Positions 3,199-51,450 of a stretch of 64,000 nt of DNA are shown in pieces (the first letter of the stretch is position 1; the number at the start of each line of letters is the position of its first letter). Below the pieces are notes generated by a model, which saw nothing but the letters and a program-made list of their open reading frames with translations, searched no databases and was not told where the DNA came from. Position numbers and translations under genes: made by a program. Origin of the DNA: Perna viridis (lineage: Eukaryota); the NCBI GenBank assembly GCA_037379345.1, contig CM074523.1:11786551-11850550 (forward strand). Reading direction: 5' to 3'.

Positions 3199-3929
3199 TT
3201 ATGAATATGTCACTCCAAATGCGTCAAGAATTTTTGTAATTGGTGTGGCAATGCACCCTTTTTTGTCTGGAAAAGTAGCTATGAGCATTCCGACACAACC
3301 TCTAGGATGGTTTGGGTCTATTGCATAGATGCAGGATCCCGAATCTCTCATCTTTGCTGAAATATTAGTGATATACAATTGACCATACATTCTTCTGTTT
3401 GTCCGTACAAGTATCTGTCTTTTGTGACATTTTTGAAGAAACGCTGTTTGCGTATGGACATCTCTTACAAAGGCGGAATAGTTTGTGTTAACTTCACGAT
3501 ATATTGCGGTTTCAAGAATCTCATTAAACTCTTGTGTTAACTCTCTATACTGCATCTGTACATCTGTATAATATCGAAGAACAATGTCACAAACAGCTTC
3601 TTTGATGTTATTTTCCAGTTTATCCTCATTAGCTAATATATCTTTAATATCATTTCGCGAAGGAATGTCACGCGGTTTTTTATTATTGATATTTTGAAAA
3701 ACTGACCCAGCTATGACTTTAACATCATCTTTAATGGTATTCCAGTAAATATCAGTTATTTGTTCAAGAGTGAATGGTTCTCCGTCGTCACATATTTTAA
3801 CAGGGGAGTTAATTGACGACAGTCCAGAAACTGCCCAGGCACTAACAGCCTTTACTGTAGGTTTAGTTATTAAATGACTCAGATCTATGTGAAGAATACA
3901 GTTCTGGTTCAAGTATGTGGACTGCATCC
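3199..3929 (-). pseudogene. Copy A last exon, protease C-terminal half (RDSG)
   Basis: Open frame homologous to 28842-29833: MRDSGSCIYA, CVGMLIA, CIATPITKIL. Confidence 0.85.
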
Positions 3930-5687: not shown

Positions 5688-6869
5688 CAATATCATGCAT
5701 ACTGTGTTTTTCATCACACGAATTAGCATCCAAAACATTGTCATTTTGATCAATATGCATTGCATCTGCTACTCTCACAAGTGCAGCATCAATGCTGACC
5801 TCTTTGTCATTGTCCATCCTAAAAATTGGATCGTAATGTTCCACTCAAAACCGTCGTTGACGCTTCACCACATTTTGCTGGTTCGTATATGTAAACATAT
5901 AGTTTCTCTTCATCATTTATACCACAATTTTTAGTTGCGAGTTGGTCTGGAGTAAAAAGCACATGTGCACACGTGATATATGTTGAATCTCCCCTTATTT
6001 TTACGAACCCGCCTAGAATACCGCTACGGTTTGGTGTCACCCCACTTGACTTCCTACTTTGATATTGCTACATAGTTGAGAACTGCCCTCGATGACATCA
6101 GTAGGAAGCCCATTGCAGTGAACTGGAAAGTGATCTTCTCCAACAGGAATGAAACCCTTCACTCGACAGTACAAGTGCAGACATTTCATCTCCTTGATTT
6201 TCCATTGTTCTAGATCTCTTTGCCTGAATCCTACAGACTTAAAAGGTGACGACAAGACTATAGTTAGTTTTGTATGTTTGTCAAAAATCTCCCTAGCGGT
6301 CTTCGCATCCACGCAAGTCTTTGATGGAAAATGAAGTACACCTTCAGCAGCCTGAATCTTGTCGTGAATTGAACTGCTCTCTTCACTGCCATAGTATGAG
6401 ATTTGCATAATTTGAACACCATGAAAGTTTTCTATCAAATCAGGATTTTTTGTCTCATTCTCAACTATTATTCGAACATCAGGTGAACATATAGTTTTCT
6501 TAGTCACACTTACTTTTGTGCAAATACATTTGAATCCTGGCCAAATATCAACGATATTTCCAAGAACAATTTCATTCGCTCTGTAAAAATGCTTTGTTAT
6601 GAACCATGAAATTGCTTTACAACAATCGTATTGATCTTTCTCAATACTTTGTTTCATAAGTTGATGTAATAAGGTAAAATTTGTGTCACACTCCGAATGA
6701 GATAGAATAAATCTGCACAACATTACTTGATTCTTTTGAACAGCATATTGTAGTAGTTGATGAAAGTTACAGCATTTAGACTTCATATATTCCGTCTTAT
6801 TTGCCATAAATAGTATTGATTCAAATTCATTTCCTCCAAAATCCTGTAATGATGATAGAACATCGATAT
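5688..6869 (-). pseudogene. Copy A protease exon (His, Asp) with two frameshifts
   Basis: 1182 nt, the same length as in copy B. Reads DIDVLSSLQDF... KGFIPVGEDHFP... GILGGFVK... YITCAHV... SIDAALV across three frame segments. Donor ATTG|GTAAGT. Confidence 0.85.
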
Positions 6870-11345: not shown

Positions 11346-13060
11346 CATGTACTGCATTTACTGTTGGATTCATGTTTTTCCCATCATTTCTGACAGACGT
11401 TTTTTTTTCTATATACATCATCGTTGATTGGGATTATTTTGTTGTTATTCGAAAGTAAATACATCGCTATATCGTACTTTTCCTGTGCAAAGGCAGCATA
11501 AAAAGATGATTGTTCATTCCCACGACAAAAATGCCGTTCATCCGCCTCAAATAAAAATTTCACTAAATCTAGATTACCCCCTTTGCAAGCAGCATGCAGC
11601 AATGATGGTTCCTTCCTATCAAACAGTGTAACGTCAGAATTTATTAAAATTTTAACTAACGAGTTGTTACCTTCCTCCAATGCAATATATAACGGTGTTT
11701 TTCCATTTTTGTCACGCAATGAGGTATCAGAAATCTTTGTCTAGTAAAAGTTTTACAATTTCATCGTTCCCTGTCTGGCAAGCATGATGTAACGGCGTTT
11801 GTCCGTTGTTATCCCACAACGGAATATCAGCAACTTTGTTCAGTAAAAGTTTAACAGTGTTTTCGTTCCCAATATATTTCTGGCATGCAACATGTAACGG
11901 CGTTTGTCCTTTTTGATCACGCGAGGAGATATCAGCATCTTTGTCTAGTAAACCTTTTACAATTTTATCGTTTCCTCTCTGGCAAGCATGATGTAACGGC
12001 GTTTGTCCGTTGTTATTACGCAACGAGGTATCAGCTTTTTTGTCCAGTAAATGTTTTACAATTTCATCGTTCCCTTTCTGGCAAGCACAATGTAACGGCG
12101 TTTGTCCGTTGTTAGCACACAACGAAATATCACCAACTTTCTCCAGTAAATGCTTAACAGTTTGTTTGTTCATAATCCATTCCTGGCATGTGACATGTAA
12201 CGGCGTTTGTACGTTTTATCACGCAACGAGGTATCAGCATCTTTTTCTAGTAAAAGTTTTACAATTTCATTGTTCCCTTTTTTGCAAGCATGATGTAACG
12301 GCGTTTGTCTGTTGTGATCACACATCGAAATATCACCAACTTTCTCCAGTAAAAGTTTAACAGTTTGTTCGTTCATATTCTTGCATGCAACATGTAACGG
12401 CGTTTGTCCTTTTTTATCACGCAACAAGGTATCAGCATCTTTGTCTAGTAAAAGTTTTACAATTTCATCGTTCCCTTTCTGGCAAGCATGATGTAACGGC
12501 GTTTGTCCGTTGTTATCACACAACGAAATATCAGGAACTTTGTTCAGTAAAAGTTTAACAGTGTTTTCGTTCCCTTTTTACCATGCAACATGAAACGGCG
12601 TTTGTCTGTTGTTATCACGCAACGAGATATCAGCACTTTTGTCTAGTAAAAGTTTTACAATTTTATAATTCAAAATTCCTTTCTGGCAAGCATGATGTAA
12701 CGGCGTTTGTCCGTTGTTATCACACAACGAAATATCACCAACTTTCTCTAGTAAAAGTTTAGCAGTTTGATCGTTCAAAATACATTTCAGGCATGCGACA
12801 TGTAACGGCGTTTGTCCGTTTTTATCACGCAACGAGGTATCAGCATCTTTGTCCAGTAAAAGTTTTACAATTTCATCGTTCCCTTTCTGGCAAGCATAAT
12901 GTAACGGCGTTTGTCTGTTGTTATCACGCAACGATGTATCAGCATCTTTGTCTAGTAAAGGTTTTATAATTTTATAGTTCTATGTCTGGCAAGCATCATG
13001 TAATAGCGTTTGTCCGTTGTTATCACACAACGAAATATCAGCAACTTTGTCCAGTAAAAG
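11346..13060 (-). pseudogene. Copy A ankyrin exon, about 16 repeats, disrupted
   Basis: Five ORF fragments with GQTPLHHAC repeats. The terminal repeats (TPLYIA, PSLLHAACKGG, SSFYAAF) match copy B. Donor CATG|GTAAGA at 11346. Confidence 0.9.
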
Positions 13061-13257
13061 TAAAATTTTATATTTTCCAAAGTTCTTCAACATTTTAGCC
13101 AAATTTAAATATATATTGTTATCAATAATTTGTTTGAAAAGGTTTTCAATCCTACTCATTGAAAATCCCCATTCCCCGACACCATATCTATCTCCCGTCC
13201 ACATTATTCATCCCCCATTCTATTTCCCAAAAATACAATTGAATACCTCTTACAGAT

Positions 13258-14090
13258 ACTGTAACATCCCTTCAGCACCTACGTATTACATCAAACTCAT
13301 ACGTTTCGTCTAAACCAGATTTGACTTTATTAACACCTCGACAGTTTTGTTCTAGTAAAGCAGAGGACACTAACCCTACCGGTGCACCTAATGCTCATAA
13401 ACAGTAATGGTCTGGGTAAACAAAAGGGGAAAGGTGCAGATGGATATACCGTATCAATCCATGAGTACACTTTGACGACCATAACATGTCAGTAGTGATG
13501 ACTTCAATCTTATAGCAATAAAACTCTGTTCCAGAGGTCTATTATTAAGAAATCTACCGCGACACAAAAATTCTGCGTAGTTACGGCAAGTTCTAGCATA
13601 ACGTATGAGTATTGATATGAAAACACCATACGCAGGTGCTGAAGGGATGTTGCCACAGATGAAAGGAAAGTTGACAATACGGAATGAAAAGTCATCGTGT
13701 TTGTCGAATAGTTTGTTCAATAGTTTTCCTTTACCATCGGTCTCTAAGTGTAGGCCAAGATATGAGGCTGACTTCACAGTGCATGTAGTATTCGCTACTT
13801 CAATTTCGTTCGGGTAGATGCGATTAAAAAAACGAAACTAGGATTTTTTATATATATAATACGTCATCTATATAGCAGATATCAAGCTAAACGACGTTCC
13901 TTCTTTTTGATTAGACATTAGCAATAAAGTCAGCCTCATTAGAGTGAAGGTATTGGGCCGCAAATAGAGCATAATTTGTTCCCAGTAGAATGTCGACTGA
14001 TTAATATATATAAAAAAAAAAAGAAAAAAAAAGCGCTTTCACCACACTGGACAAACATGTTGTCGATCACAAATATCCAGCATTTTGGAA
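13258..14090. mobile_element. Penelope-like remnants: short + fragment (about 13258-13400) then inverted - fragment (about 13420-14090)
   Basis: ORF 13454-13777 reads KLFDKHDDFSFRIVNFPFICGNIPSAPAYGVFIS. Same arrangement as 45628-46165. Confidence 0.82.
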
Positions 14091-28099: not shown

Positions 28100-28246
28100 C
28101 ATATTGTACATACGACCCTAATATTATCATATTGTACATACGACCCTAATACTATCATATTGTACATACAACAATAATACTATCATATTGTACATACGAC
28201 CCTAATACTATCATATTGTACATACGACACAAATACTATCATATTG
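28100..28246 (+). repeat. 28-bp minisatellite, about 5 copies
   Basis: Unit catattgtacatacgaccctaatactat. Confidence 0.9.
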
Positions 28247-41800: not shown

Positions 41801-44800
41801 GGTCTCTTCCTATCACACGGTGTAGCGCCAGAATTTATTAAAATTTCAACTAATGATATGTCACCTTTCTCACATGCAATATATAACGGTGTTTTTTCCA
41901 TTTTTGTCACGCGGTGAGGTGTTCGCAGTTTTTTTCAGCAAAACTTTGACCACTTCTCTAGCACTGCTTCCACATGCAACCTGTAACGGCGTTTGTCCGT
42001 TGTTATCACACAAGGAAATATCAGCATCTTTGTCCAGTAAAAGTTTTACAATTTCATCGTTCAATGTCTGGCAAGCATGATGTAACGGCGTTTGTCCGTA
42101 TTTATCACACAACGAAATATCAGCATCTTTGTCCAGTAAAAGGGTTACAATTTTTTTGCTACCCTTCTGACTTGCAACGTGTAACGGCGTTTGTCCGTTG
42201 TTATCACACAACGAAATATCAGCATCTTTGTCCAGTAAAAGGGTTACAATTTTATCGTTCCATGTCCGGCAAGCATGATGTAACGGCGTTTGTCCGTATT
42301 TATCACACAACGAAATATCAGCATCTTTGTCCAGTAAAAGGGTTACAATTTTATCGTTCCATGTCCGGCAAGCATGATGTAACGGCGTTTGTCCGTTGTT
42401 ATCACACAACGAAATATCAGCATCTTTGTCCAGTAAAAGTTTAACAGTGCGTTCGTTCCCAAAATATTCCTGGCATGCAACATGTAACGGCGTTTGTCCT
42501 TTTTGATCACGCGATAAGATATCAGCATCTTTGTCTAGTAAAAGTTTTACAATTTCACCGTTCCCTGTCATGCAAGCATGATGTAACGGCGTTTGTCCGT
42601 TGTTATCACACAACGAAATATCAGCATCTTTGTCCAGTAAAAGGGTTACAATTTTATCGTTCCATGTCCGGCAAGCAAGATGTAACGGCGTTTGTCCTTT
42701 TTGATCACACAACGAAATATCAGCATCTTTGTCCAGTAAAAGTTTTACAATTTCATCCTTCCATGTCCGGCAAGCATGATGTAACGGCGTTTGTCCTTTT
42801 TGATCACGCGATGAGATATCAACATCTTTGTCTAGTAAAAGTTTTACAAGTACATCGTTCCCTGTCATGCAAGCATGATGTAACGGCGTTTGTCCGTATT
42901 TATCACACAACGAAATATCAGCATCTTTGTCCAGTAAAAGGGTTACAATTTTATCGTTCCCTGTCATGCAAGCATGATGTAACGGCGTTTGTCCGTTGTT
43001 ATCACACAACGAAATATCAGCATCTTTGTCCAGTAAAAGGGTTACAATTTCATCCTTCCCTGTCATGCAAGCATGATGTAACGGCGTTTGTCCGTTGTTA
43101 TCACACAACGAAATATCAGCATCTTTGTCCAGTAAAAGGGTTACAATTTCATCCTTCCCTGTCATGCAAGCATGATGTAACGGCGTTTGTCCGTTGTTAT
43201 CACACAACGAAATATCAGCATCTTTGTCCAGTAAAAGGGTTACAATTATATCGTTCCTTGTCCGGCAAGCATAATGTAACGGCGTTTGTCCTTTTTGATC
43301 ACGCGATGAGATATCAACATCTTTGTCTAGTAAAAGTTCTACAATTACATCCTTCCCTGTCATGCAAGCATGATGTAACGGCGTTTGTCCGTTGTTATCA
43401 CACAACGAAATATCAGCATCTTTGTCCAGTAAAAGGGTAACAATTTTATCGTTCCATGTCCGGCAAGCATGATGTAACGGCGTTTGTCCGTATTTATAAC
43501 ACAACGAAATATCAGCATCTTTGTCCAGTAAAAGAGTAAATTTTATCGTTCGATGTCATGCAAGCATGATGTAACGGCGTTTGTCCGTATTTATCACACA
43601 ACGAAATATCAGCATCTTTGTCCAGTAAAAGGGTTACAATTATATCGTTCCTTGTCCGGCAAGCATAATGTAACGGCGTTTGTCCGTTGTTATCACACAA
43701 CGAAATATCAGCATCTTTGTCCAGTAAAAGGGTTACAATTTTATCGTTCCATGTCCGGCAAGCATGATGTAACGGCGTTTGTCCGTTGTTATCACACAAC
43801 GAAATATCAGCATCTTTGTCCAGTAAAAGAGTTACAATTTTTTCGCTACTCTTCTGACTTGCAACATGATGTAACGGCGTTTGTCCTTTTTGATCACACA
43901 ACGAAATATCAGCATCTTTGTCCAGTAAAAGGGTTACAATTTTATCGTTCCGTTTCTGGCAAGCAAGATGTAACGGCGTTTGTCCTTTTTGATCACGCGA
44001 TGAGATATCAGCATCTTTGTCTAGTAAAAGTTCTACAATTACATCCTTCCCTGTCATGCAAGCATGATGTAACGGCGTTTGTCCGTTGTTATCACACAAC
44101 GAAATATCAGCATCTTTGTCCAGTAAAAGTTTTACAATTTCATCCTTCCCTGTCATGCAAGCATGATGTAACGGCGTTTGTCCGTTGTTATCACACAACG
44201 AAATATCAGCATCTTTGTCCGGTAAAAGGGTTACAATTTTATCGTTCCATGTCCGGCAAGCATGATGTAACGGCGTTTGTCCTTTTTGATCACGCGATGA
44301 GATATCAACATCTTTGTCTAGTAAAAGTTTTACAATTACATCCTTCCCTGTCATGCAAGCATGATGTAACGGCGTTTGTCCTTTTTGATCACGCGATGAG
44401 ATATCAACATCTTTGTCTAGTAAAAGTTCTACAATTACATCCTTCCCTGTCATGCAAGCATGATGTAACGGCGTTTTTCCGTTGTTATCACACAACGAAA
44501 TATCAGCATCTTTGTCCAGTAAAAGGGTTACAATTTTATCGTTCCGTGTTTGGCAAGCACGATGTAACGGCGTTTGTCCGTATATATCACACAACGAAAT
44601 ATCAGCATCTTTGTCCAGTAAAAGGGTTACAATTTTATCGTTCCCTGTCATGCAAGCATGATGTAACGGCGTTTGTCCGTATTTATCACACAACGAAATA
44701 TCAGCATCTTTGTCCAGTAAAAGGGTTACAATTTTATCGTTCCGTGTTTGGCAAGCACGATGTAACGGCGTTTGTCCGTATTTATCACACAACGAAATAT

Positions 44801-44975
44801 CAGCATCTTTGTCCAGTAAAAGGGTTACAATTTTATCGTTCGCGTTCCATGCCTGGCAAGCAACATGTAATGGCGTTTGTCCAATATTATTACTCAATGA
44901 TGTATCCGCATTTTTGTCCAGTAAATATTTTACTTTGTTTATCTGTCCTTTACGACAGGCAATATGTAAAGGCAT
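28842..44975 (-). CDS. Copy B: spliced ankyrin-repeat / NAL1-like trypsin-fold serine protease gene (exons 41544-44975, 37891-37999, 31575-32756, 28842-29833); 3 frameshifts, either assembly errors or recent pseudogenisation; true 5' end uncertain
   Basis: Donors CATG|GTAAGA (41544), GAAG|GTAATT (37891) and CTTG|GTAAGT (31575). Acceptors ttttcag (37999), tttgtag (32756) and ttttacag (29833). Phases match (phase 1) if one A is removed from the A6 run in the small exon. Copy A has the same exon layout. Confidence 0.8.
31575..32756 (-). CDS. Copy B exon: helical region, NAL1-like pro-region and N-terminal half of the protease (catalytic His and Asp)
   Basis: Open 1182-nt exon containing LHLYSRLKGFVPVGESHFP..GLPVDVIEG, GSTVG..GTLGGFV, YLTCAH (His codon 31855-31857) and SVDAAVV (Asp codon 31678-31680). 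Confidence 0.88.
32888..35520 (-). mobile_element. Degenerate near-full-length Penelope-like retroelement with N-terminal GIY-YIG endonuclease followed by RT (Naiad-type domain order), inside a copy B intron
   Basis: Minus-strand order: KCSIKNCKTC, NLIYGLECNLC, REEYWIR..GTAIPYGCND (GIY-YIG), then SKGPKYREP, MGINCAPLLADLFL, FRYIDDVL, SYLDL and TKLYDKRD..F..VNFP..SAPAYGVFISQLIRYARAC, then a 3' UTR. Many stops and frameshifts. Confidence 0.88.
36320..36830 (+). mobile_element. CR1/L2-group LINE 3' end remnant
   Basis: VPRVRTTTHGAHPFRYGGAKLWNELSN..W.GSSC then stop, followed by a T-rich 3' UTR with an aaagctct..agagcttt hairpin. Confidence 0.65.
37891..37999 (-). CDS. Copy B linker exon (DTLMTNPLVLHRYAIDCIVNAKQGRYTLHKEK...), not in the ORF track
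   Basis: AG/GT boundaries and clear homology to copy A exon 9567-9674. It is 109 nt versus 108 nt, with the extra base in a homopolymer. Confidence 0.8.
39830..40235 (-). mobile_element. Penelope-like 3' fragment in a copy B intron
   Basis: Similar to about 32900-33385 with deletions. Absent at the paralogous site in copy A (about 10510). Confidence 0.82.
41544..44975 (-). CDS. Copy B ankyrin exon, about 34 repeats of 33 aa (99 nt)
   Basis: ORFs 43512-44975, 41870-43504 and 41491-41910 give repeated DxxGQTPLHHACxxxNDKIVTLLLDKDADISLC. Frameshifts at about 43537 (2-nt loss) and about 41895 (extra A in a run). The exon ends ...NAVH-G at a GTAAGA donor. Confidence 0.93.
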
Positions 44976-45627
44976 GTCTCCATTATCTATAATTAATTAT
45001 TTTGTTTGTATTAAATTGGATTTGTCTTTAAGTAAAAGTTAGTTTTTAGACGTTGAAGTATGCAGATGTGTTGTACTTATACCTTATTCTACAGATCTTA
45101 AAACGTACAGGATTCCCATTTACACCATATACTATCCCTTATTCCCCGTTTTCACCAAAATTACCCATTCCTCATAGAAAAACCACCATCCCAAAATAGA
45201 AGTCCCATTGCCTTTTTTTTTAAATATTCACATTATCAAATTCCTTTCATATATGGTATAGCTCTTTAATGGCATATGATGGAATGGAACTTCCCACCTA
45301 TAGGATATACCACCACCACCCCATTCCCCATTTCGCTTTCCCCATTACCCTTTAAAAAATTTTCATTGCCCATTAAATTCCCCACTGCATATTTTTTTAT
45401 CGAAGACTTTCATTATCAAACTAAATTTATTTTTTTTCTAAATTCTAAATATTTTAAGCTAAATTTAAATATATATTATTATAAATAAATTGTTAAAAAA
45501 AGTTTTCCAATCCTACTATTTGAAAATCTCCATTCCCCGACACCATCTTTGTCTCCATTCTACATTATCCATCTCCCATTCCCCTTTCCCCAAATACAAT
45601 TTAATGGGAAACTTTTCTTATACAAGT

Positions 45628-46165
45628 GCTGTAACACCCCTTCAGCACCTGCGTATCACATCAAACTCATACGTTTCGCCTACCCCAGACTTGACTTTTT
45701 ATATGCACCCCCACTATAATTTCTAGAAAAGCAGAGGACGCTAACCCTACCGGTGCACATGATGCTCATGAAAATGCATGTTTGGGGTCCACAAAAGGGA
45801 AAAGGAAAACGATGAAACAAACCGGTTCTCATGGTGCAGATGAATACACCGTATCAATCCATGAGTTCATTTTGACGACTATTAAACTTCTGTAGTGATG
45901 ACGTCAATCTTCTATCAATATTACCCTAGGCCTGTTCTAGGGATGTTGCTACAGATGGAAGGAATGTTGACAATACAGAATGAAAAGATATCGTGTTCAT
46001 CGAATAGTTTGTTTAATAGTTTCTTTTACCATCAATCTCTAAGTGTAGGCCAATATATGAGGCTGACTTCACAGTGCCTGTAGTATTCTCTATCTCAAGT
46101 TCTTTTGGGTAGTTGCGATGTAAAAAAATACCCGAAACTAGGATTTTTTAACGGTAATACGTCAC
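45628..46165. mobile_element. Penelope-like remnants paralogous to 13258-13870
   Basis: Same + fragment then - fragment junction (gaggacgctaaccctaccggtgcac..atgctcat). Confidence 0.8.
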
Positions 46166-46193: not shown

Positions 46194-46740
46194 ATATATA
46201 TATATAAGGGTCTGAAAAATTTCCAACGATGTTAAAATTGTCAAATTTGCGAAGCAAATTTTTGGTCGTTCCCTCCGCGAGACTCGAACTCGTACCGCTG
46301 TGACATCTATGGCAACACCTCCTGCACAAAGTCCAGCGCCCTAGACCACTCAGCCAGAAAGGCTATATAAAAATATAGCTTTCGCTGGCAGGGTCATTCC
46401 TCCTCGTAGGATTAATCTATGGCTGTAACTTAATACACGATGTATGGTAGTACGGGACAGTTCATCTAGGTGTCATTTTGTTGGAAAGTTGATCAAATTA
46501 ATAATGCATGTCACAACAAATCAATATTATACAACGTCTCAAAATGTTACGACTCTATTCGCTACACTGCTCCGTCGGATCAAATTGATACAGGGAAGAT
46601 TGACTTTGTGCAGGCATAGATATTGCCATAGATGTCACAACAGTACGAGTTCGAGTCCCGCGGAGGGAACGACCAAAAATTTGCATCGCAAATATGACAG
46701 TTCTAACATCGTTAAGAATTTTTCAGACCTTCCTATATAT
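46194..46740. mobile_element. SINE-containing composite: minus-strand unit plus inverted partial copy, TA-flanked
   Basis: Reverse SINE at 46207-46370, unit flank to about 46600, then forward SINE 3' half at 46612-46732. Confidence 0.78.
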
Positions 46741-48664
46741 ATTGGTGTTTCAACGTTGGCCCAACGTAGTATCGCAGTTTAGATCCCACACAATAGTTGG
46801 TTTCATACAACCGGATTTCCTTTCTAGTTTTACTTTCTTGAGACCGACATACATTTTTGCATCAAGAATAATATTTAGTCTTTTTTAACATTTTTGTTAC
46901 CCAAGTCGTTTCGACGTTGGTTCAATGTTGGTTCAGTGTTGGCTCACTGTTTCTGGGTTGAACAGATGTAGAATAATGCAAATCATGTAATCATGGTTTT
47001 GATTTAAAAATCAGAATTTAACAATACTCTCACGCAGAATTCGCTTCTAAAACAAATTTTTAAAGAGAAATATAAAATGAAATGGTTGTTCAAATATAGT
47101 AGGACCAACGTTTGACCAACGTTGGGCCAACGTAGTATCGCAGTTTAGATCCAACACAATATTTGGTTTCATACATCTAGATTTGCTTTCTAGTTTTACT
47201 TTCTTGAGACCGACAAACAGTGTTGGCTCACTGTTTCTGGGTTGAACAGATGTAGAATAATGCAAATCATGTAATCATGGTTTTGATCTAAAAATCAAAA
47301 TTTAACAATACTTTCACGCAGAATTCGCTTCTAAAACAAATTTTTAAGGAGAAATATAAAATGAAATGGTTGTTCAAATATAGTAGGGCCAACGTTTGAC
47401 TAACGTTGGGCCAACATAGAACCTGTATATGATATAAAAGTATTTAAATATTTTTACTATACGATTTTCATGAACATTTGACAAACTGGTTGGACTATTT
47501 ATAACTTTCACAATGGTATAGTCTTATATTTTACTAAATGTTATAATATTTGAACTAATTATTAAACAGAATCGCTAAAACATTGTGATCTCACCATTAT
47601 CATATTCAAGGTATGAAATGTCAAACAAGTTCTCCGTATCTAAATTTACTTTGTGAAACATCGATGTCTTCATTCTTTTCTCCCTCGATGATGACTCATC
47701 TTCCGAAAATCCTAACGTCGTTCCCAGGATATGGTCAGTGTCGAAACCTAAGGTAAAAACATTTTCTAAACGACATAGTTAACCCTTATAATTAAAGGCT
47801 CTAGAGAGCTTGAATCGCTTACAAGGTCCAAAATAATTGATAAGCCTTCTAAGGGAACTTAGAATTGGACTCTCGACCGACCCTTCCTATACTATTGTCA
47901 TAAAAATCATTTAATTACTAGAGATAAAAGATATATCTGTCATAGAAATGCTCTGACCAGGTGAACTATTAACGTAAAGAAATATATGAAACATGTTAAA
48001 TAAGGCAAGAGAATCAAACATAACGCCAACAGTTGTAGACGGATCTGTCTTACAATTTCAGCAAAGGTCCGTCTCAACTAGCTGATCAAATTTGCTTGCC
48101 GCCAAATTTTAACTTCATCCAAACATTTTGGATTTATTTGCAAAGAATCTTACTTGGCCCGTTTAGAAACATCAACAATGTTATCCATCAGAAAAGGAGT
48201 TTGGAATGTAAAAAATTGCAAAAATTCCATTTAAAAGTCAATAATTCCAATATCGGTCAACATATCTTTATGTAAATGTCGGCAGAGGTCCATCCCACCG
48301 TACTGATTAACATACTCACGTCACAGTTAAACTAAACCCCTTTAATTTCGAGTAATTTAGAATTATGTAGGAAATTTGGGGAAAAAATCTATCTAAAGGT
48401 CCATATTGCAAACATTCGTCAACGGATCTTTTTAAAAATTGCGGCATAGGTTGAAAATCTCTATTCCCTGTCAAATATTAGCTACACCATCTTTTGAGTT
48501 ATTCGCAAATTTCTGAAATTTGGCCACTATGGCCTATTCTTAGTAACGGCGGTCACGTTTTTCGCGAAACACGGATTGTCAGATCCAGATAGTAGTGTAT
48601 CATTTAGAAAGTACTTGTAGTATAGGGTATTATACTTATTTACCACCTTAACAAATCAGGAGAC

Positions 48665-48667
<3 letters not shown>

Positions 48668-48710
<43 letters not shown>
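48668..48710. repeat. (TA)n microsatellite
   Basis: Read directly from the sequence. Confidence 0.95.
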
Positions 48711-48713
<3 letters not shown>

Positions 48714-49645
48714 ACGTCTCAGAATGTGACGACTCTATTTACTACACTGCTCCATCGGATCAAATTGATACAGGGAAGATATATTAGCGTATAGAGAGGT
48801 CTGAAAAATTCCCAACGATGTTAGAACTGTCATATTTGCGATGCAAATTTTTGGTCGTTCCCTCCGCGGGACTCGAACTCGTACTGCTGTGACATCTGTC
48901 CCGTACCACCATACATCGTGTACTAAGTTACAGCCATAGATTAATCCTACGAGTAGAAATGACCCGGCCAGCGAAAGCTATATTTTTATATAGCCTAGCT
49001 GGCCGAGTGGTCTAGGGCGCTGGACTAAGTGCAGGCGGTGTTGCCATAGTTGTCACAGCGTTACGAGTTCGAGTCCCGCGGAGGGAACGACCAAAAATTT
49101 GCTTCGCACATTTGACAGTTCTAACATCGTTGGGAATTTTTCAGACCCTTCTATAAGTTTACGTTATCTTCTCTGTATCAATTTGATCCGATTGAGCAGT
49201 GTAACGAATAGAGTCGTCACATTCTGAGACGTTGTATAATATTGATTTGTTGTGGCATGCATCATTAATTTGATCCTCTATCCTACATAATAACACCTAG
49301 ATGAACTGTCCCGTACTACCATACAATGTGTACTAAGTTACAGCCCTAGATTAATCCTACGAGGAGAAATGATCCGGCCAGCGAAAGCTATATTTTAATA
49401 TAGCCTAGCTGGCCGAGTGGTCTAGGACGCTGGACTTAGTGCAGGCGGTGTTGCCATAGATGTCACAGCGGTACGAGTTCGAGTCCCGCGGAGGGAACGA
49501 CCAAAAATTTGCTTCGCAAATTTGACAGTTCTAACATCGTTGGGAATTTTTCAGACCCTTCTATAAGTTTACGTTATCTTCCCTGTATCAATTTGATCCG
49601 ATTGAGCAGTGTAACGAATAGAGTCGTCACATTCTGAGACGTTGT
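48711..49645. mobile_element. SINE-containing array: inverted partial unit plus two tandem 410-bp units, within (TA)n
   Basis: Starts acaacgtctcagaatgtgacgactctatt and ends with its reverse complement. gagggaacga at 49081 and 49491 gives a period of 410. Confidence 0.82.
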
Positions 49646-51450
49646 ATATATATATATATATAGATATATTGGTGTTTCAACGTTGGCCCAACGTAGTATC
49701 GCAGTTTAGATCCAACACAATATTTGGTTTCATACAACCGGCTTCGCTTTCTAGTTTTACTTTCTTGAGACCGACATACAGTGTTGGCTCACTGTGTCTG
49801 GGTTGACCAGATGTAGAATAGAATAATGCAAATCATGTAATCATGATTTTGATTTAAAAAATCAAAATTTAACAATACTCTCACGCAGAATTCGCTTCTA
49901 AAACAAATTTTTAAGGAGAAATATAAAATGAAATGGTTGTTCAAATATAGTAGGGCTAACGTTTGACCAACGTTGGGCCAACATAGAACCTGTATATGAT
50001 ATGAAAGTATTTAATTTTTTTTACTATACGATTCTCATGAACATTTGACAAACTGGTTGGACTATTTATAACTTTCACAATGGTATAGTCTTATATTGTT
50101 ATAATATTTGAACTAATTATTAAGCAGAATCGCTAAAACATTGTGATCTCACCTTTATCACATTCTTGGTGTGAAATGTCAAACAAGTCCTCCGTATCTA
50201 AATTTACATTGTGAAACATCGATGTCTTCATACTTTTCTCCCTCGATGATGACTCATCTTCCGAAAATCTTAACGTCGTTCCCAGGATATGGTCAGTGTC
50301 GAAAACTAAGGTAAAAACATTTTCTAAACGACATAGTTAACCCTTATAATTAAAGGCTCTAGAGAGCTTGAATCGCTTACAAGGTCCAAAATAATTGATA
50401 AGCCTTCTAAGGGAACTTAGAATTGGACTCTCGACCGACCCTTCCTATACTATTGTCATAAAAATCATTTAATTACTAGAGATAAAAGATATATCTGTCA
50501 TAAAAATGCTCTGACCAGGTGAACTATTAACGTAAAGAAATATATGAAACATGTTAAATAAGGCAAGAGAATCAAACGTAACGCCAACAGTTGTAGACGG
50601 ATCTGTCTTACAATTTCAGCAAAGGTCCGTCTCAACTAGCTGATCAAATTTGCTTGCCGCCAAATTTTAACTTCATCCAAACATTTTGGATTTATATGCA
50701 AAGAATCTTACTTGGCCCGTTTAGAAACAACAACAAAGTTATCCAGCAGAAAAGGAGTTTGGAATGTAAAAAATTGCAAAAATTCCATTTAAAAGTCAAT
50801 AATTCCAATATCGGTCAACAGATGTTTATGAAAATGTCGGATCCGTCCCACCGTACTGATTAATTTACTCACGTCACAGTTAAACTAAACCCCTTTAATT
50901 TCGAGTTGTTTAGGATTATGTAGGAAAATTGGGAAAAATGTATCTAAAGGTCCATATTGCAAACATTCGTCAACGGATCTTTTTGAAATTTGCGGCATAA
51001 GTTGAACAACTCTATTCCCTGTCAAATTTTAGCTACACCATCTTTTGAGTTATTTGCAAATTTCTGCAATTTGGCCACTATGGCCTATTCTTAGTAACGC
51101 GGTCATGTTTTTCGCGAAACACGGATTGTCAGATCCAGATAGTAGTGTATCATGTAGAAAGTACTTGTAGTATAGGGTATTATACTTATTTTCCACCTTA
51201 ACAAATCTGGGAGACCTATCTGCAATATAGAAGGTCATATACAGCAGATATATTGCGATATGTTCTCAGGAGAGTAAGATGATAGACATATCTATCTATC
51301 TGAATCATCATTGGACCAATCACTTTGTGGAGGAAATAAACAGTAAATCAAAAATAACACTTGCAATTTAGATTTCACAAAAGGCAGGGTCGATGACTTT
51401 CATTTCAGACTGTTGACAATAACTGTTTAATTGTTATTTAAACCTGGCAA

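What the first reader, a model, noticed from the sequence alone, without database searches (positions are those of the whole stretch)
41950..44900. Ankyrin repeats behave like a natural DARPin library: fixed scaffold, variable binding positions
Seen: about 30 internal repeats are near-identical at the DNA level, including silent sites (tgtaacggcgtttgtcc). Variation clusters at the beta-turn (D-NN/KY/QK/IY-G), at the residues after TPLHxAC (RTWN, MTGK, MTGN, RTRN, QTRN, QKRN, QTLN, QEYFGN) and at the preceding LC/SR pair. These variants recur in different combinations. Known: these positions correspond to the concave binding surface randomised in DARPins, and fungal NLRs diversify high-identity WD/ANK/TPR arrays by repeat shuffling. 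Inference: unequal crossover or gene conversion generates recognition diversity.
Basis: partly seen in the sequence, partly recalled or inferred. Interest (0 to 1): 0.85.

Follow-up and report, generated by a model that had tools for sequence, protein, structure and literature searches.

The report
Near-identical ankyrin repeat array, broken gene
A mollusc-like genome carries a 3-kb run of 30 almost identical ankyrin repeats that differ mainly at about ten surface positions and have been reshuffled by recombination. This pattern is already known from fungal immune receptors, and this copy is frame-broken and probably decaying.

Summary
On the minus strand, 41909-44891 holds 30 tandem 99-nt ankyrin units (nucleotide similarity to consensus 0.93, protein 0.86). 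Amino-acid variation sits in 10 of 33 codons: 2, 3, 10, 13, 15, 16, 18, 21, 32, 33. The other 23 codons have pN/pS of about 0.2.

Variants recur as mosaics: 39% of informative site pairs fail the four-gamete test, and a PHI-like test gives p=0.0006. There are two linkage blocks separated by invariant stretches. This fits exchange between units by unequal crossover or gene conversion.

The DARPin analogy holds only in part. Four of the six DARPin library positions vary. Positions 5 and 14 are fixed, and positions 15, 16, 18, 21 and 32 vary although they lie outside that surface. Part of the variety also predates an old segmental duplication.

The locus is probably not a working receptor:
- It has two frame breaks, one confirmed in an independent short-read assembly.
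- No N-terminal domain was found within 19 kb upstream.
- Private mutations look neutral, and one puts a proline in a helix.

It is a new, probably decaying, member of the known class of highly internally conserved repeats (fungal NLRs; recently surveyed in animals). Polymorphism among individuals and any function are untested.

The parts
42008..44891 (-). Core of the array: units u1-u29 of 99 nt (33 codons). Units u1 and u25 are 105 nt, u11 is 102 nt, u14 is 97 nt.
   Evidence: Pfam Ank_2 E=9e-183 and 3e-137 on the two ORF pieces
41909..42007 (-). Unit u30, a divergent last repeat (mean identity 0.65 to the others).
44892..44986 (-). Divergent first repeat (cap-like). It is preceded by an in-frame stop and a possible but weak splice acceptor at about 44987-44988. 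An ATG lies at 44975.
   Evidence: read directly; splicing not tested
43534..43539 (-). Frame break 1. Unit u14 is 2 nt short inside the outer-helix codons, and the frame shifts here.
   Evidence: not checked in an independent assembly
41892..41897 (-). Frame break 2. A run of six A puts the C-terminal tail out of frame, and the array frame stops at 41870.
   Evidence: the same run is present in the independent short-read contig L001
41491..41910 (-). Former C-terminal tail: 2-3 degenerate ankyrin repeats plus about 50 non-repeat residues, now out of frame with the array.
   Evidence: (P0125, 99% identical)
43512..44975 (-). Open reading frame piece 1 (487 aa; units 0-14).
41870..43504 (-). 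Open reading frame piece 2 (544 aa; units 15-30).
11384..13070 (-). Paralogous, decayed ankyrin array A: 13-14 units, within-array identity 0.77, stops and frameshifts, plus its tail. It is part of an old segmental duplication.

Best explanation
This is the repeat-coding exon of an ankyrin-repeat gene in a eukaryotic genome, probably that of a bivalve mollusc. The array belongs to the 'high internal conservation' type.

How it arose. One 33-codon unit was amplified to about 30 copies. The copies are kept alike by exchange between misaligned units, through unequal crossover or gene conversion. Exchange joints fall in the invariant stretches: codons 4-9 and the region around codons 22-23. As a result two modules are reassorted. 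One is the hairpin module, codons 24-33 plus the next unit's codons 1-3. The other is the helix-turn-helix module, codons 10-21.

What varies. Amino-acid variety is retained at about ten solvent-exposed positions. About half of them lie on the canonical concave binding face. The structural positions are held constant. Some of the variety comes from unit types that existed before the locus was duplicated. The rest arose or spread after the recent amplification.

State of this copy. It is probably no longer a working gene. It has two frame breaks and lacks any recognisable N-terminal domain nearby, and its newest mutations look unselected.

What is shown and what is inferred. Shown: the anatomy, the site pattern, the mosaic signature, the breaks and the paralogy. 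Inferred: the exchange mechanism, past selection for diversity, the binding role and the loss of function.
For: - Thirty in-register units match the ankyrin models strongly. They align without gaps to ankyrin-R/B and DARPin chains.
- Protein similarity to consensus is 0.858.
- The site pattern and pN/pS contrast are given. Within the recently amplified LC-type units pS is 0.037 and pN 0.077. Within SR-type units pS is 0 and pN 0.063.
- Mosaic signature: 99 of 253 informative site pairs are incompatible, PHI-like p=0.0006, and at least 6 exchange events are needed.
- After re-phasing, codons 24-33 plus the next 1-3 form one compatible block. SR at 32-33 is always followed by DQK, 6 of 6 times.
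- There is no multi-unit periodicity, and the longest exact repeat is 192 nt.
- Terminal units are the most divergent, as expected when array edges escape homogenisation.
- Mean identity within the array is 0.86, against 0.785 to paralog array A. The flanks of the two loci are 75-87% identical.
- Unit u25 is closest to unit A12 of the paralog (0.92), and SR-type units are closest to A13.
- The frame breaks are seen. The second is confirmed in L001, which is 99.4% identical and comes from an independent assembly.
- Private mutations number 8 nonsynonymous to 2 synonymous, against a neutral expectation of 3.5:1. They include Leu24 to Pro and Asp1 to Tyr.
- tblastn with 277 ankyrin-protein relatives finds no N-terminal domain elsewhere in the window.
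Against: - The excess of nonsynonymous change rests on few synonymous sites. It was computed on units that recombine, so it does not prove positive selection.
- The variable positions correlate with positions that vary in ankyrin repeats generally (Spearman 0.47-0.60). Relaxed constraint alone explains part of the pattern.
- Frame break 1 is not verified independently and could be an assembly error. Frame break 2 could simply be this gene's natural stop.
- Upstream exons could lie beyond the window.
- No data from other individuals cover the array, so ongoing exchange is inferred from a single haplotype.
Confidence: 0.6

Rival explanations
1. The gene is intact and expressed, either as an ankyrin-only protein or with distant upstream exons. 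Its array serves now as a diversified binding surface. On this view the unit-14 break is an assembly error and the A-run merely sets the natural stop codon.
For: Long ORF pieces of 487 and 544 aa. Scaffold codons are strongly constrained among shared variants. Nonsynonymous change is in excess at surface positions. The array has cap-like divergent end repeats.
Against: ORF length is uninformative here: the antisense strand also carries ORFs of 479 and 321 aa simply because the unit lacks stops. The out-of-frame tail still encodes ankyrin repeats that are in frame in the ancestral arrangement, and the shift is real in a second assembly. Private mutations look neutral and include a helix-breaking proline. 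Paralog A is clearly dead.
Confidence: 0.2
2. There is no selection for diversity. The pattern is what any recently amplified ankyrin array shows. A few old unit types were copied and mixed. Differences survive only at positions where the fold tolerates change, and everything else is identical by recent descent.
For: Variable positions are a subset of generically variable ankyrin positions. SR-type, LC-type and 35-residue unit types pre-date the A/B duplication. Overall pN/pS is 1.03. Among shared variants the nonsynonymous to synonymous count of 23:4 is close to the neutral site ratio.
Against: Generically variable positions 1, 5, 14, 17, 25 and 26 are fixed, while the usually conserved turn glycine (15) varies among G, W, R and L. 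Within the recently amplified types nonsynonymous differences exceed synonymous ones at least twofold. At the positions chosen beforehand, pN is 0.155-0.221 against an array-wide pS of 0.068-0.142.
Confidence: 0.3
3. The array is an assembly artefact: a collapsed, over-expanded or chimeric repeat.
For: A tandem array of 99-nt units at about 90% identity is hard to assemble. The short-read contig L001 ends inside the array.
Against: 23 of the 25 clean units are distinct. The longest exact repeat is 192 nt, and no multi-unit block is duplicated. The array is therefore resolvable by reads of a few kb. The unique 3' flank joins the last units identically in an independent assembly.
Confidence: 0.04

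Closest known systems
[quoted passage not shown] 2014, PMC4986451; Ament-Velasquez & Saupe 2026, PMC13449251)
   Same: Repeats are 80-100% alike, with a handful of hypervariable positions mostly on the binding face. There are signs of repeat shuffling, an association with repeat-rich or TE-rich surroundings, non-canonical 34-36-residue units interspersed, and pseudogenised copies. The Psim of 0.858 passes both published thresholds.
   Different: No NACHT, NB-ARC or nSTAND domain was found with this array. The host is an animal (bivalve-like), not a fungus. Repeat-number polymorphism is untested. About half of the variable positions (15, 16, 18, 21, 32) lie off the concave face. This copy is frame-broken.
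Designed ankyrin repeat protein libraries (DARPins, Binz et al. 2003: positions 2, 3, 5, 13, 14, 33, cited from general knowledge; ANK-N5C library: positions 2, 3, 5, 10, 13, 33, PMC4308713)
   Same: An identical 33-residue framework is stacked many times, with variety at hairpin positions 2 and 3, inner-helix positions 10 and 13, and position 33.
   Different: Positions 5 and 14 are fixed here. Each position carries 2-5 alternatives rather than full randomisation. There is extra variation in the inter-helix turn and on the outer helix. The array has 30 repeats rather than 2-5. This is an analogy, not a family relationship.
Bivalve lineage-specific STAND/ROCO-ankyrin proteins (for example Mytilus and Saccostrea HEPN_DZIP3-nSTAND3-ANK, and Ostrea edulis Roc-COR-ANK)
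   Same: These are the best named database matches. Some also have internally conserved ankyrin arrays, with amino-acid identity of 0.70-0.73 between units.
   Different: The similarity is limited to generic ankyrin repeats at 40-47% identity, and the tail aligns equally to many repeats. No HEPN, Ig, nSTAND3 or Roc-COR coding sequence is present in the window.

Membership tests
Ankyrin repeat (Pfam PF00023 / PF12796) | 33-residue period with the G-x-TPLH-x-A motif and a significant HMM match | tested here: met
   Ank_2 E=9e-183 and 3e-137, with 14-16 Ank stretches per ORF piece. Gapless in-register alignment to ankyrin-R/B and DARPin chains.
HIC superstructure-forming repeats | Repeat similarity Psim >= 0.70 (2026 criterion) or >= 85% over >= 100 aa (2014 criterion) | tested here: met
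   Protein Psim is 0.858 over 25 units (825 aa). Nucleotide Psim is 0.927.
HIC superstructure-forming repeats | A few hypervariable positions mapping to the ligand-binding face | tested here: inconclusive
   Ten variable codons. Positions 2, 3, 10, 13 and 33 coincide with positions randomised in designed libraries (5 of 7, p=0.016). Positions 15, 16, 18, 21 and 32 do not.
HIC superstructure-forming repeats | Positive diversifying selection at the hypervariable codons | tested here: inconclusive
   pN/pS is 2.14 at 14 positions chosen beforehand and 0.30 elsewhere. It is at least 2 within recently amplified unit types. There are few synonymous sites, the units recombine, and no site-model test was run.
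HIC superstructure-forming repeats | Repeat-number or repeat-order polymorphism among individuals | not testable with these tools
   Only the 3' edge of the array is covered by an independent contig (L001). No other copies were found.
NLR-like / STAND receptor | A STAND NTPase (NACHT, NB-ARC, nSTAND) and an effector domain N-terminal to the repeats | tested here: not met
   tblastn with 10 and then 277 ankyrin-protein relatives finds nothing outside the two arrays. Other ORFs in the window have no Pfam hits. Exons beyond the window cannot be excluded.
Pseudogene / decaying gene copy | Disrupted reading frame relative to the ancestral arrangement | tested here: met
   A 2-nt defect in unit 14 and an extra base in an A-run before the tail. 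The latter was reproduced in L001.
Pseudogene / decaying gene copy | Recent mutations free of purifying selection | tested here: inconclusive
   Private changes number 8 nonsynonymous to 2 synonymous, against a neutral expectation of 3.5:1. They include L24P, D1Y and D17G. The sample is small.

The most novel reading that the evidence does not exclude
Bivalves, like filamentous fungi, may keep a germline repertoire of ankyrin arrays that are continually reshuffled by exchange between near-identical units. Individuals and haplotypes would then carry different unit numbers and orders, giving different binding specificities in immune-type receptors. On this reading the locus is a recently inactivated member, or a donor of units, within such a repertoire.
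Probability: 0.15. Interest if true: 0.65.

Novelty: new member of a known kind. Interest (0 to 1): 0.35.

Why it matters
If intact relatives of this array exist and vary among individuals, a diversity-generating mechanism known from fungal NLRs would extend to a marine invertebrate. Bivalves already have very large and variable immune gene families. Such relatives would also offer natural, evolution-tested variants of the ankyrin binding scaffold. This includes tolerated substitutions at the turn glycine (position 15) that designed libraries avoid. As it stands, this locus is a well-preserved fossil of the process, not a working example.

Tried and rejected
- N-terminal exons. I searched the window by tblastn with 10 and then 277 relatives, including HEPN_DZIP3, Ig, nSTAND3 and Roc-COR bearers. 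Nothing was found outside the two arrays.
- A specific link to oyster and mussel STAND-ankyrin proteins through the C-terminal tail. I rejected this because the tail aligns equally well to many of their repeats.
- Fusion of the array with the downstream serine-protease-like ORFs. I rejected this because their few homologs are stand-alone proteins of about 260-450 aa.
- Higher-order (multi-unit) periodicity or recent block duplication. None was found.
- Other alleles or copies. An exact 27-mer scan of metagenome contigs found nothing. A five-unit protein query found no near-identical fragments; the best hits were 41-58% identical. The ENA sample accession does not appear in the literature library.
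- Pfam on TE-like ORFs next to the arrays gave no hits.
- Rfam and tRNA scans of the window found nothing.
The concave/convex assignment therefore rests on published ankyrin and DARPin descriptions, not on a model.
The three ORF pieces were searched separately by reference.
- Nothing in the window looked human.
Full report
**What is there**

The window has about 32% G+C, no tRNA or Rfam match, and many interspersed repeats. This looks like a eukaryotic, invertebrate-type genome. The array is coding on the minus strand.

Tandem Repeats Finder gives 41982-44925, period 99, 29.6 copies, 87% matches. Anchoring on the conserved core finds 30 units between 44891 and 41909. Twenty-six are exactly 99 nt. 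Units u1 and u25 are 105 nt, u11 is 102 nt and u14 is 97 nt.

The two long ORF pieces match the Pfam ankyrin models at E=9e-183 and 3e-137. They align without gaps, in register, to ankyrin-R/B and to DARPin chains in the PDB.

**How alike the units are, and where they differ**

I used the 25 clean 99-nt units, leaving out the four of odd length and the degenerate last unit.
- Mean pairwise nucleotide identity is 0.89.
- Similarity to the consensus is 0.927 for DNA and 0.858 for protein.

With D of the D-x-x-G hairpin numbered as position 1, as in DARPins, amino-acid entropy exceeds 0.75 bit only at positions 2, 3, 10, 13, 15, 16, 18, 21, 32 and 33. Position 28 varies slightly.

Nei-Gojobori proportions:

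| Codon set | pN/pS |
|---|---|
| Whole unit | 1.03 |
| The ten variable codons | 2.8 |
| The other 23 codons | 0.21 |
| 14 positions chosen beforehand as generically variable | 2.14 |
| The remaining 19 positions | 0.30 |

The ten variable codons were picked after seeing the data, which inflates their ratio. I therefore also defined 14 generically variable positions from 394 unrelated ankyrin units. In that set pN is 0.199 (bootstrap 0.155-0.221) and pS is 0.093.

**Fit to the DARPin picture**

The fit is partial.
- Of the six classical DARPin positions (2, 3, 5, 13, 14, 33; Binz et al. 2003, from general knowledge), four vary here. Positions 5 (Gln) and 14 (Thr) are almost fixed. Fisher p=0.053.
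- Position 10 is randomised in another designed library, where positions 2, 3, 5, 10, 13 and 33 form a continuous binding surface on the hairpin and inner helix (PMC4308713). Against the union of both libraries the overlap is 5 of 7, p=0.016.
- The remaining variable positions are 15/16 (turn between the helices, including G/W/R/L at the usually conserved glycine), 18/21 (outer helix) and 32. None of these belongs to that surface.
- The variability profile correlates with that of ankyrin repeats in general (Spearman 0.47-0.60). Part of the pattern is therefore ordinary tolerance of the fold.

**Evidence for exchange between units**

- Of 253 pairs of informative sites, 99 fail the four-gamete or compatibility test.
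- Incompatibility rises with distance. A PHI-like permutation test gives p=0.0006, and at least six exchange events are needed.
- I re-phased the units so that the hairpin is not split. Codons 24-33 plus the next unit's codons 1-3 then form one fully compatible block; for example, SR at 32-33 is followed by DQK in 6 of 6 cases. Codons 10-21 form a second block.
- The blocks are separated by the invariant stretches at codons 4-9 and around codons 22-23. Homologous exchange would be expected to resolve there.
- There is no multi-unit periodicity. The longest exact repeat is 192 nt.
- The end units are the most divergent, as expected when array edges escape homogenisation.

These features fit unequal crossover or gene conversion between units. 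That mechanism is inferred, not observed.

**History**

A second, decayed array lies at about 11.4-13.1 kb on the same strand. It has 13-14 units, within-array identity of 0.77, and several stops and frameshifts. It is part of an old segmental duplication. The flanks of the two arrays are collinear at 75-87% identity, and a serine-protease-like ORF pair downstream is also duplicated.
- Units of the main array are closer to each other (0.86) than to the paralog (0.785). The main array was therefore expanded or homogenised after the duplication.
- Unit u25 is closest to paralog unit A12 (0.92), and the SR-type units are closest to A13 (0.89-0.91).
- The SR/LC split, with its linked silent differences at codons 24, 30 and 31, and the 35-residue unit type are therefore inherited, not new.
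- Within the recently amplified types, nonsynonymous differences still exceed synonymous ones. LC-type units have pS 0.037 and pN 0.077. SR-type units have pS 0 and pN 0.063.

**State of the gene**

The reading frame is broken twice.
- Unit 14 is 2 nt short at about 43534-43539.
- A run of six A at 41892-41897 throws the former C-terminal tail out of frame, so the array frame stops at 41870. The tail contains two to three degenerate ankyrin repeats.

The second break is real. An independent short-read contig from an ENA assembly (L001, 99.4% identical over 878 nt) carries the same run. The first break could not be checked.

Upstream of the first, cap-like repeat there is an in-frame stop and only a weak candidate splice acceptor. 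The next 19 kb contain repeats, and tblastn with 277 ankyrin-protein relatives finds no coding match there.

Long ORFs are not evidence of function here. The antisense strand also has ORFs of 479 and 321 aa simply because the unit lacks stops.

Private mutations, leaving out the divergent unit 28, number 8 nonsynonymous to 2 synonymous. The neutral site ratio is 3.5:1. They include Leu24 to Pro in the outer helix and Asp1 to Tyr. Older, shared variation is therefore strongly patterned, while the newest changes look unselected. That is the signature of a recently inactivated copy, although the counts are small.

**Relatives and organism**

The closest named matches are bivalve proteins at only 40-47% identity. 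They include Mytilus and Saccostrea HEPN_DZIP3-nSTAND3-ankyrin proteins and an Ostrea edulis Roc-COR-ankyrin protein. The similarity is generic to ankyrin repeats, so membership of those receptor families is not established.

Two public datasets hold 99% identical fragments of the window (ENA ERZ13706909 and Logan SRR26215656). The species has therefore been sequenced elsewhere, but it is not named in the data available to me.

Several retrieved animal proteins also have internally conserved ankyrin arrays with variable positions 1-3, 5, 10, 13 and 14.

**Comparison with the literature**

[quoted passage not shown] They show repeat-number polymorphism and positively selected sites mostly on the concave face (PMC4986451). 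A 2026 survey reports such arrays in animals, plants and bacteria too. They are enriched, but not exclusive, in proteins with STAND NTPases: 22% against 5.6% (PMC13449251).

The present array meets the similarity criterion and shows the site pattern and mosaic signature. It lacks the NTPase context and is broken. I found no paper in the held library describing such arrays in bivalves.

**Verdict**

This is a new, probably decaying, member of a known kind. The three ORF pieces were searched separately.

Noticed in passing
window 28842-29831 and 31552-32850 (minus); paralog at 3199-3927 and 6037-6807 (minus): A duplicated two-ORF gene whose sequence shows, by eye, His/Asp/Ser motifs like those of a chymotrypsin-fold serine protease (LTCAHA, DAAVV, GDSGACIY). 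It has no Pfam hit and only seven database homologs, one of them labelled 'Serine protease' in Mytilus edulis. It lies downstream of each ankyrin array within the same old segmental duplication.
   Followed up: partly
window 11615-13024 versus 41909-44891: The 17-nt core coding G-Q-T-P-L-H is exact in 8 of 14 units of the decayed paralog array, although the flanks of the two loci are only 75-87% identical. Third codon positions of codons 4-9 are 97% conserved there, against 85% elsewhere. This could reflect conversion tracts centred on the core or exchange between the two loci. It is unexplained.
   Followed up: partly
window 46200-51100: Repeat-rich block just upstream of the array: a 2.56-kb direct repeat at 94-96% identity (about 47290-48548 versus 49857-51099) and 400-nt inverted repeats at 92% (46201-46600 versus 49166-49565).
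   Followed up: no
window 13454-13777, 33486-35191, 45549-46083: Fragments of an interspersed element occur next to both ankyrin arrays and between the protease-like gene and array B. By eye they include a reverse-transcriptase-like Y-I-D-D motif at 33486-33743. There is no Pfam hit.
   Followed up: partly
window 41974-44992 (+ strand): Antisense ORFs of 156, 321 and 479 aa run across the array. They are by-products of repeating a unit that has no stop codon in that frame and are not evidence of a gene.
   Followed up: yes
window 28100-28246: A 28-nt tandem repeat, 5.2 copies, 92% matches, in non-coding sequence.
   Followed up: no
proteins P0186, P0197, P0209, P0157 (retrieved relatives): Other animal ankyrin proteins with highly similar internal repeats (amino-acid identity 0.71-0.82 between units). 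P0186 (4340 aa) shows a repeating pattern of several units. Their variable positions are 1-3, 5, 10, 13 and 14.
   Followed up: partly
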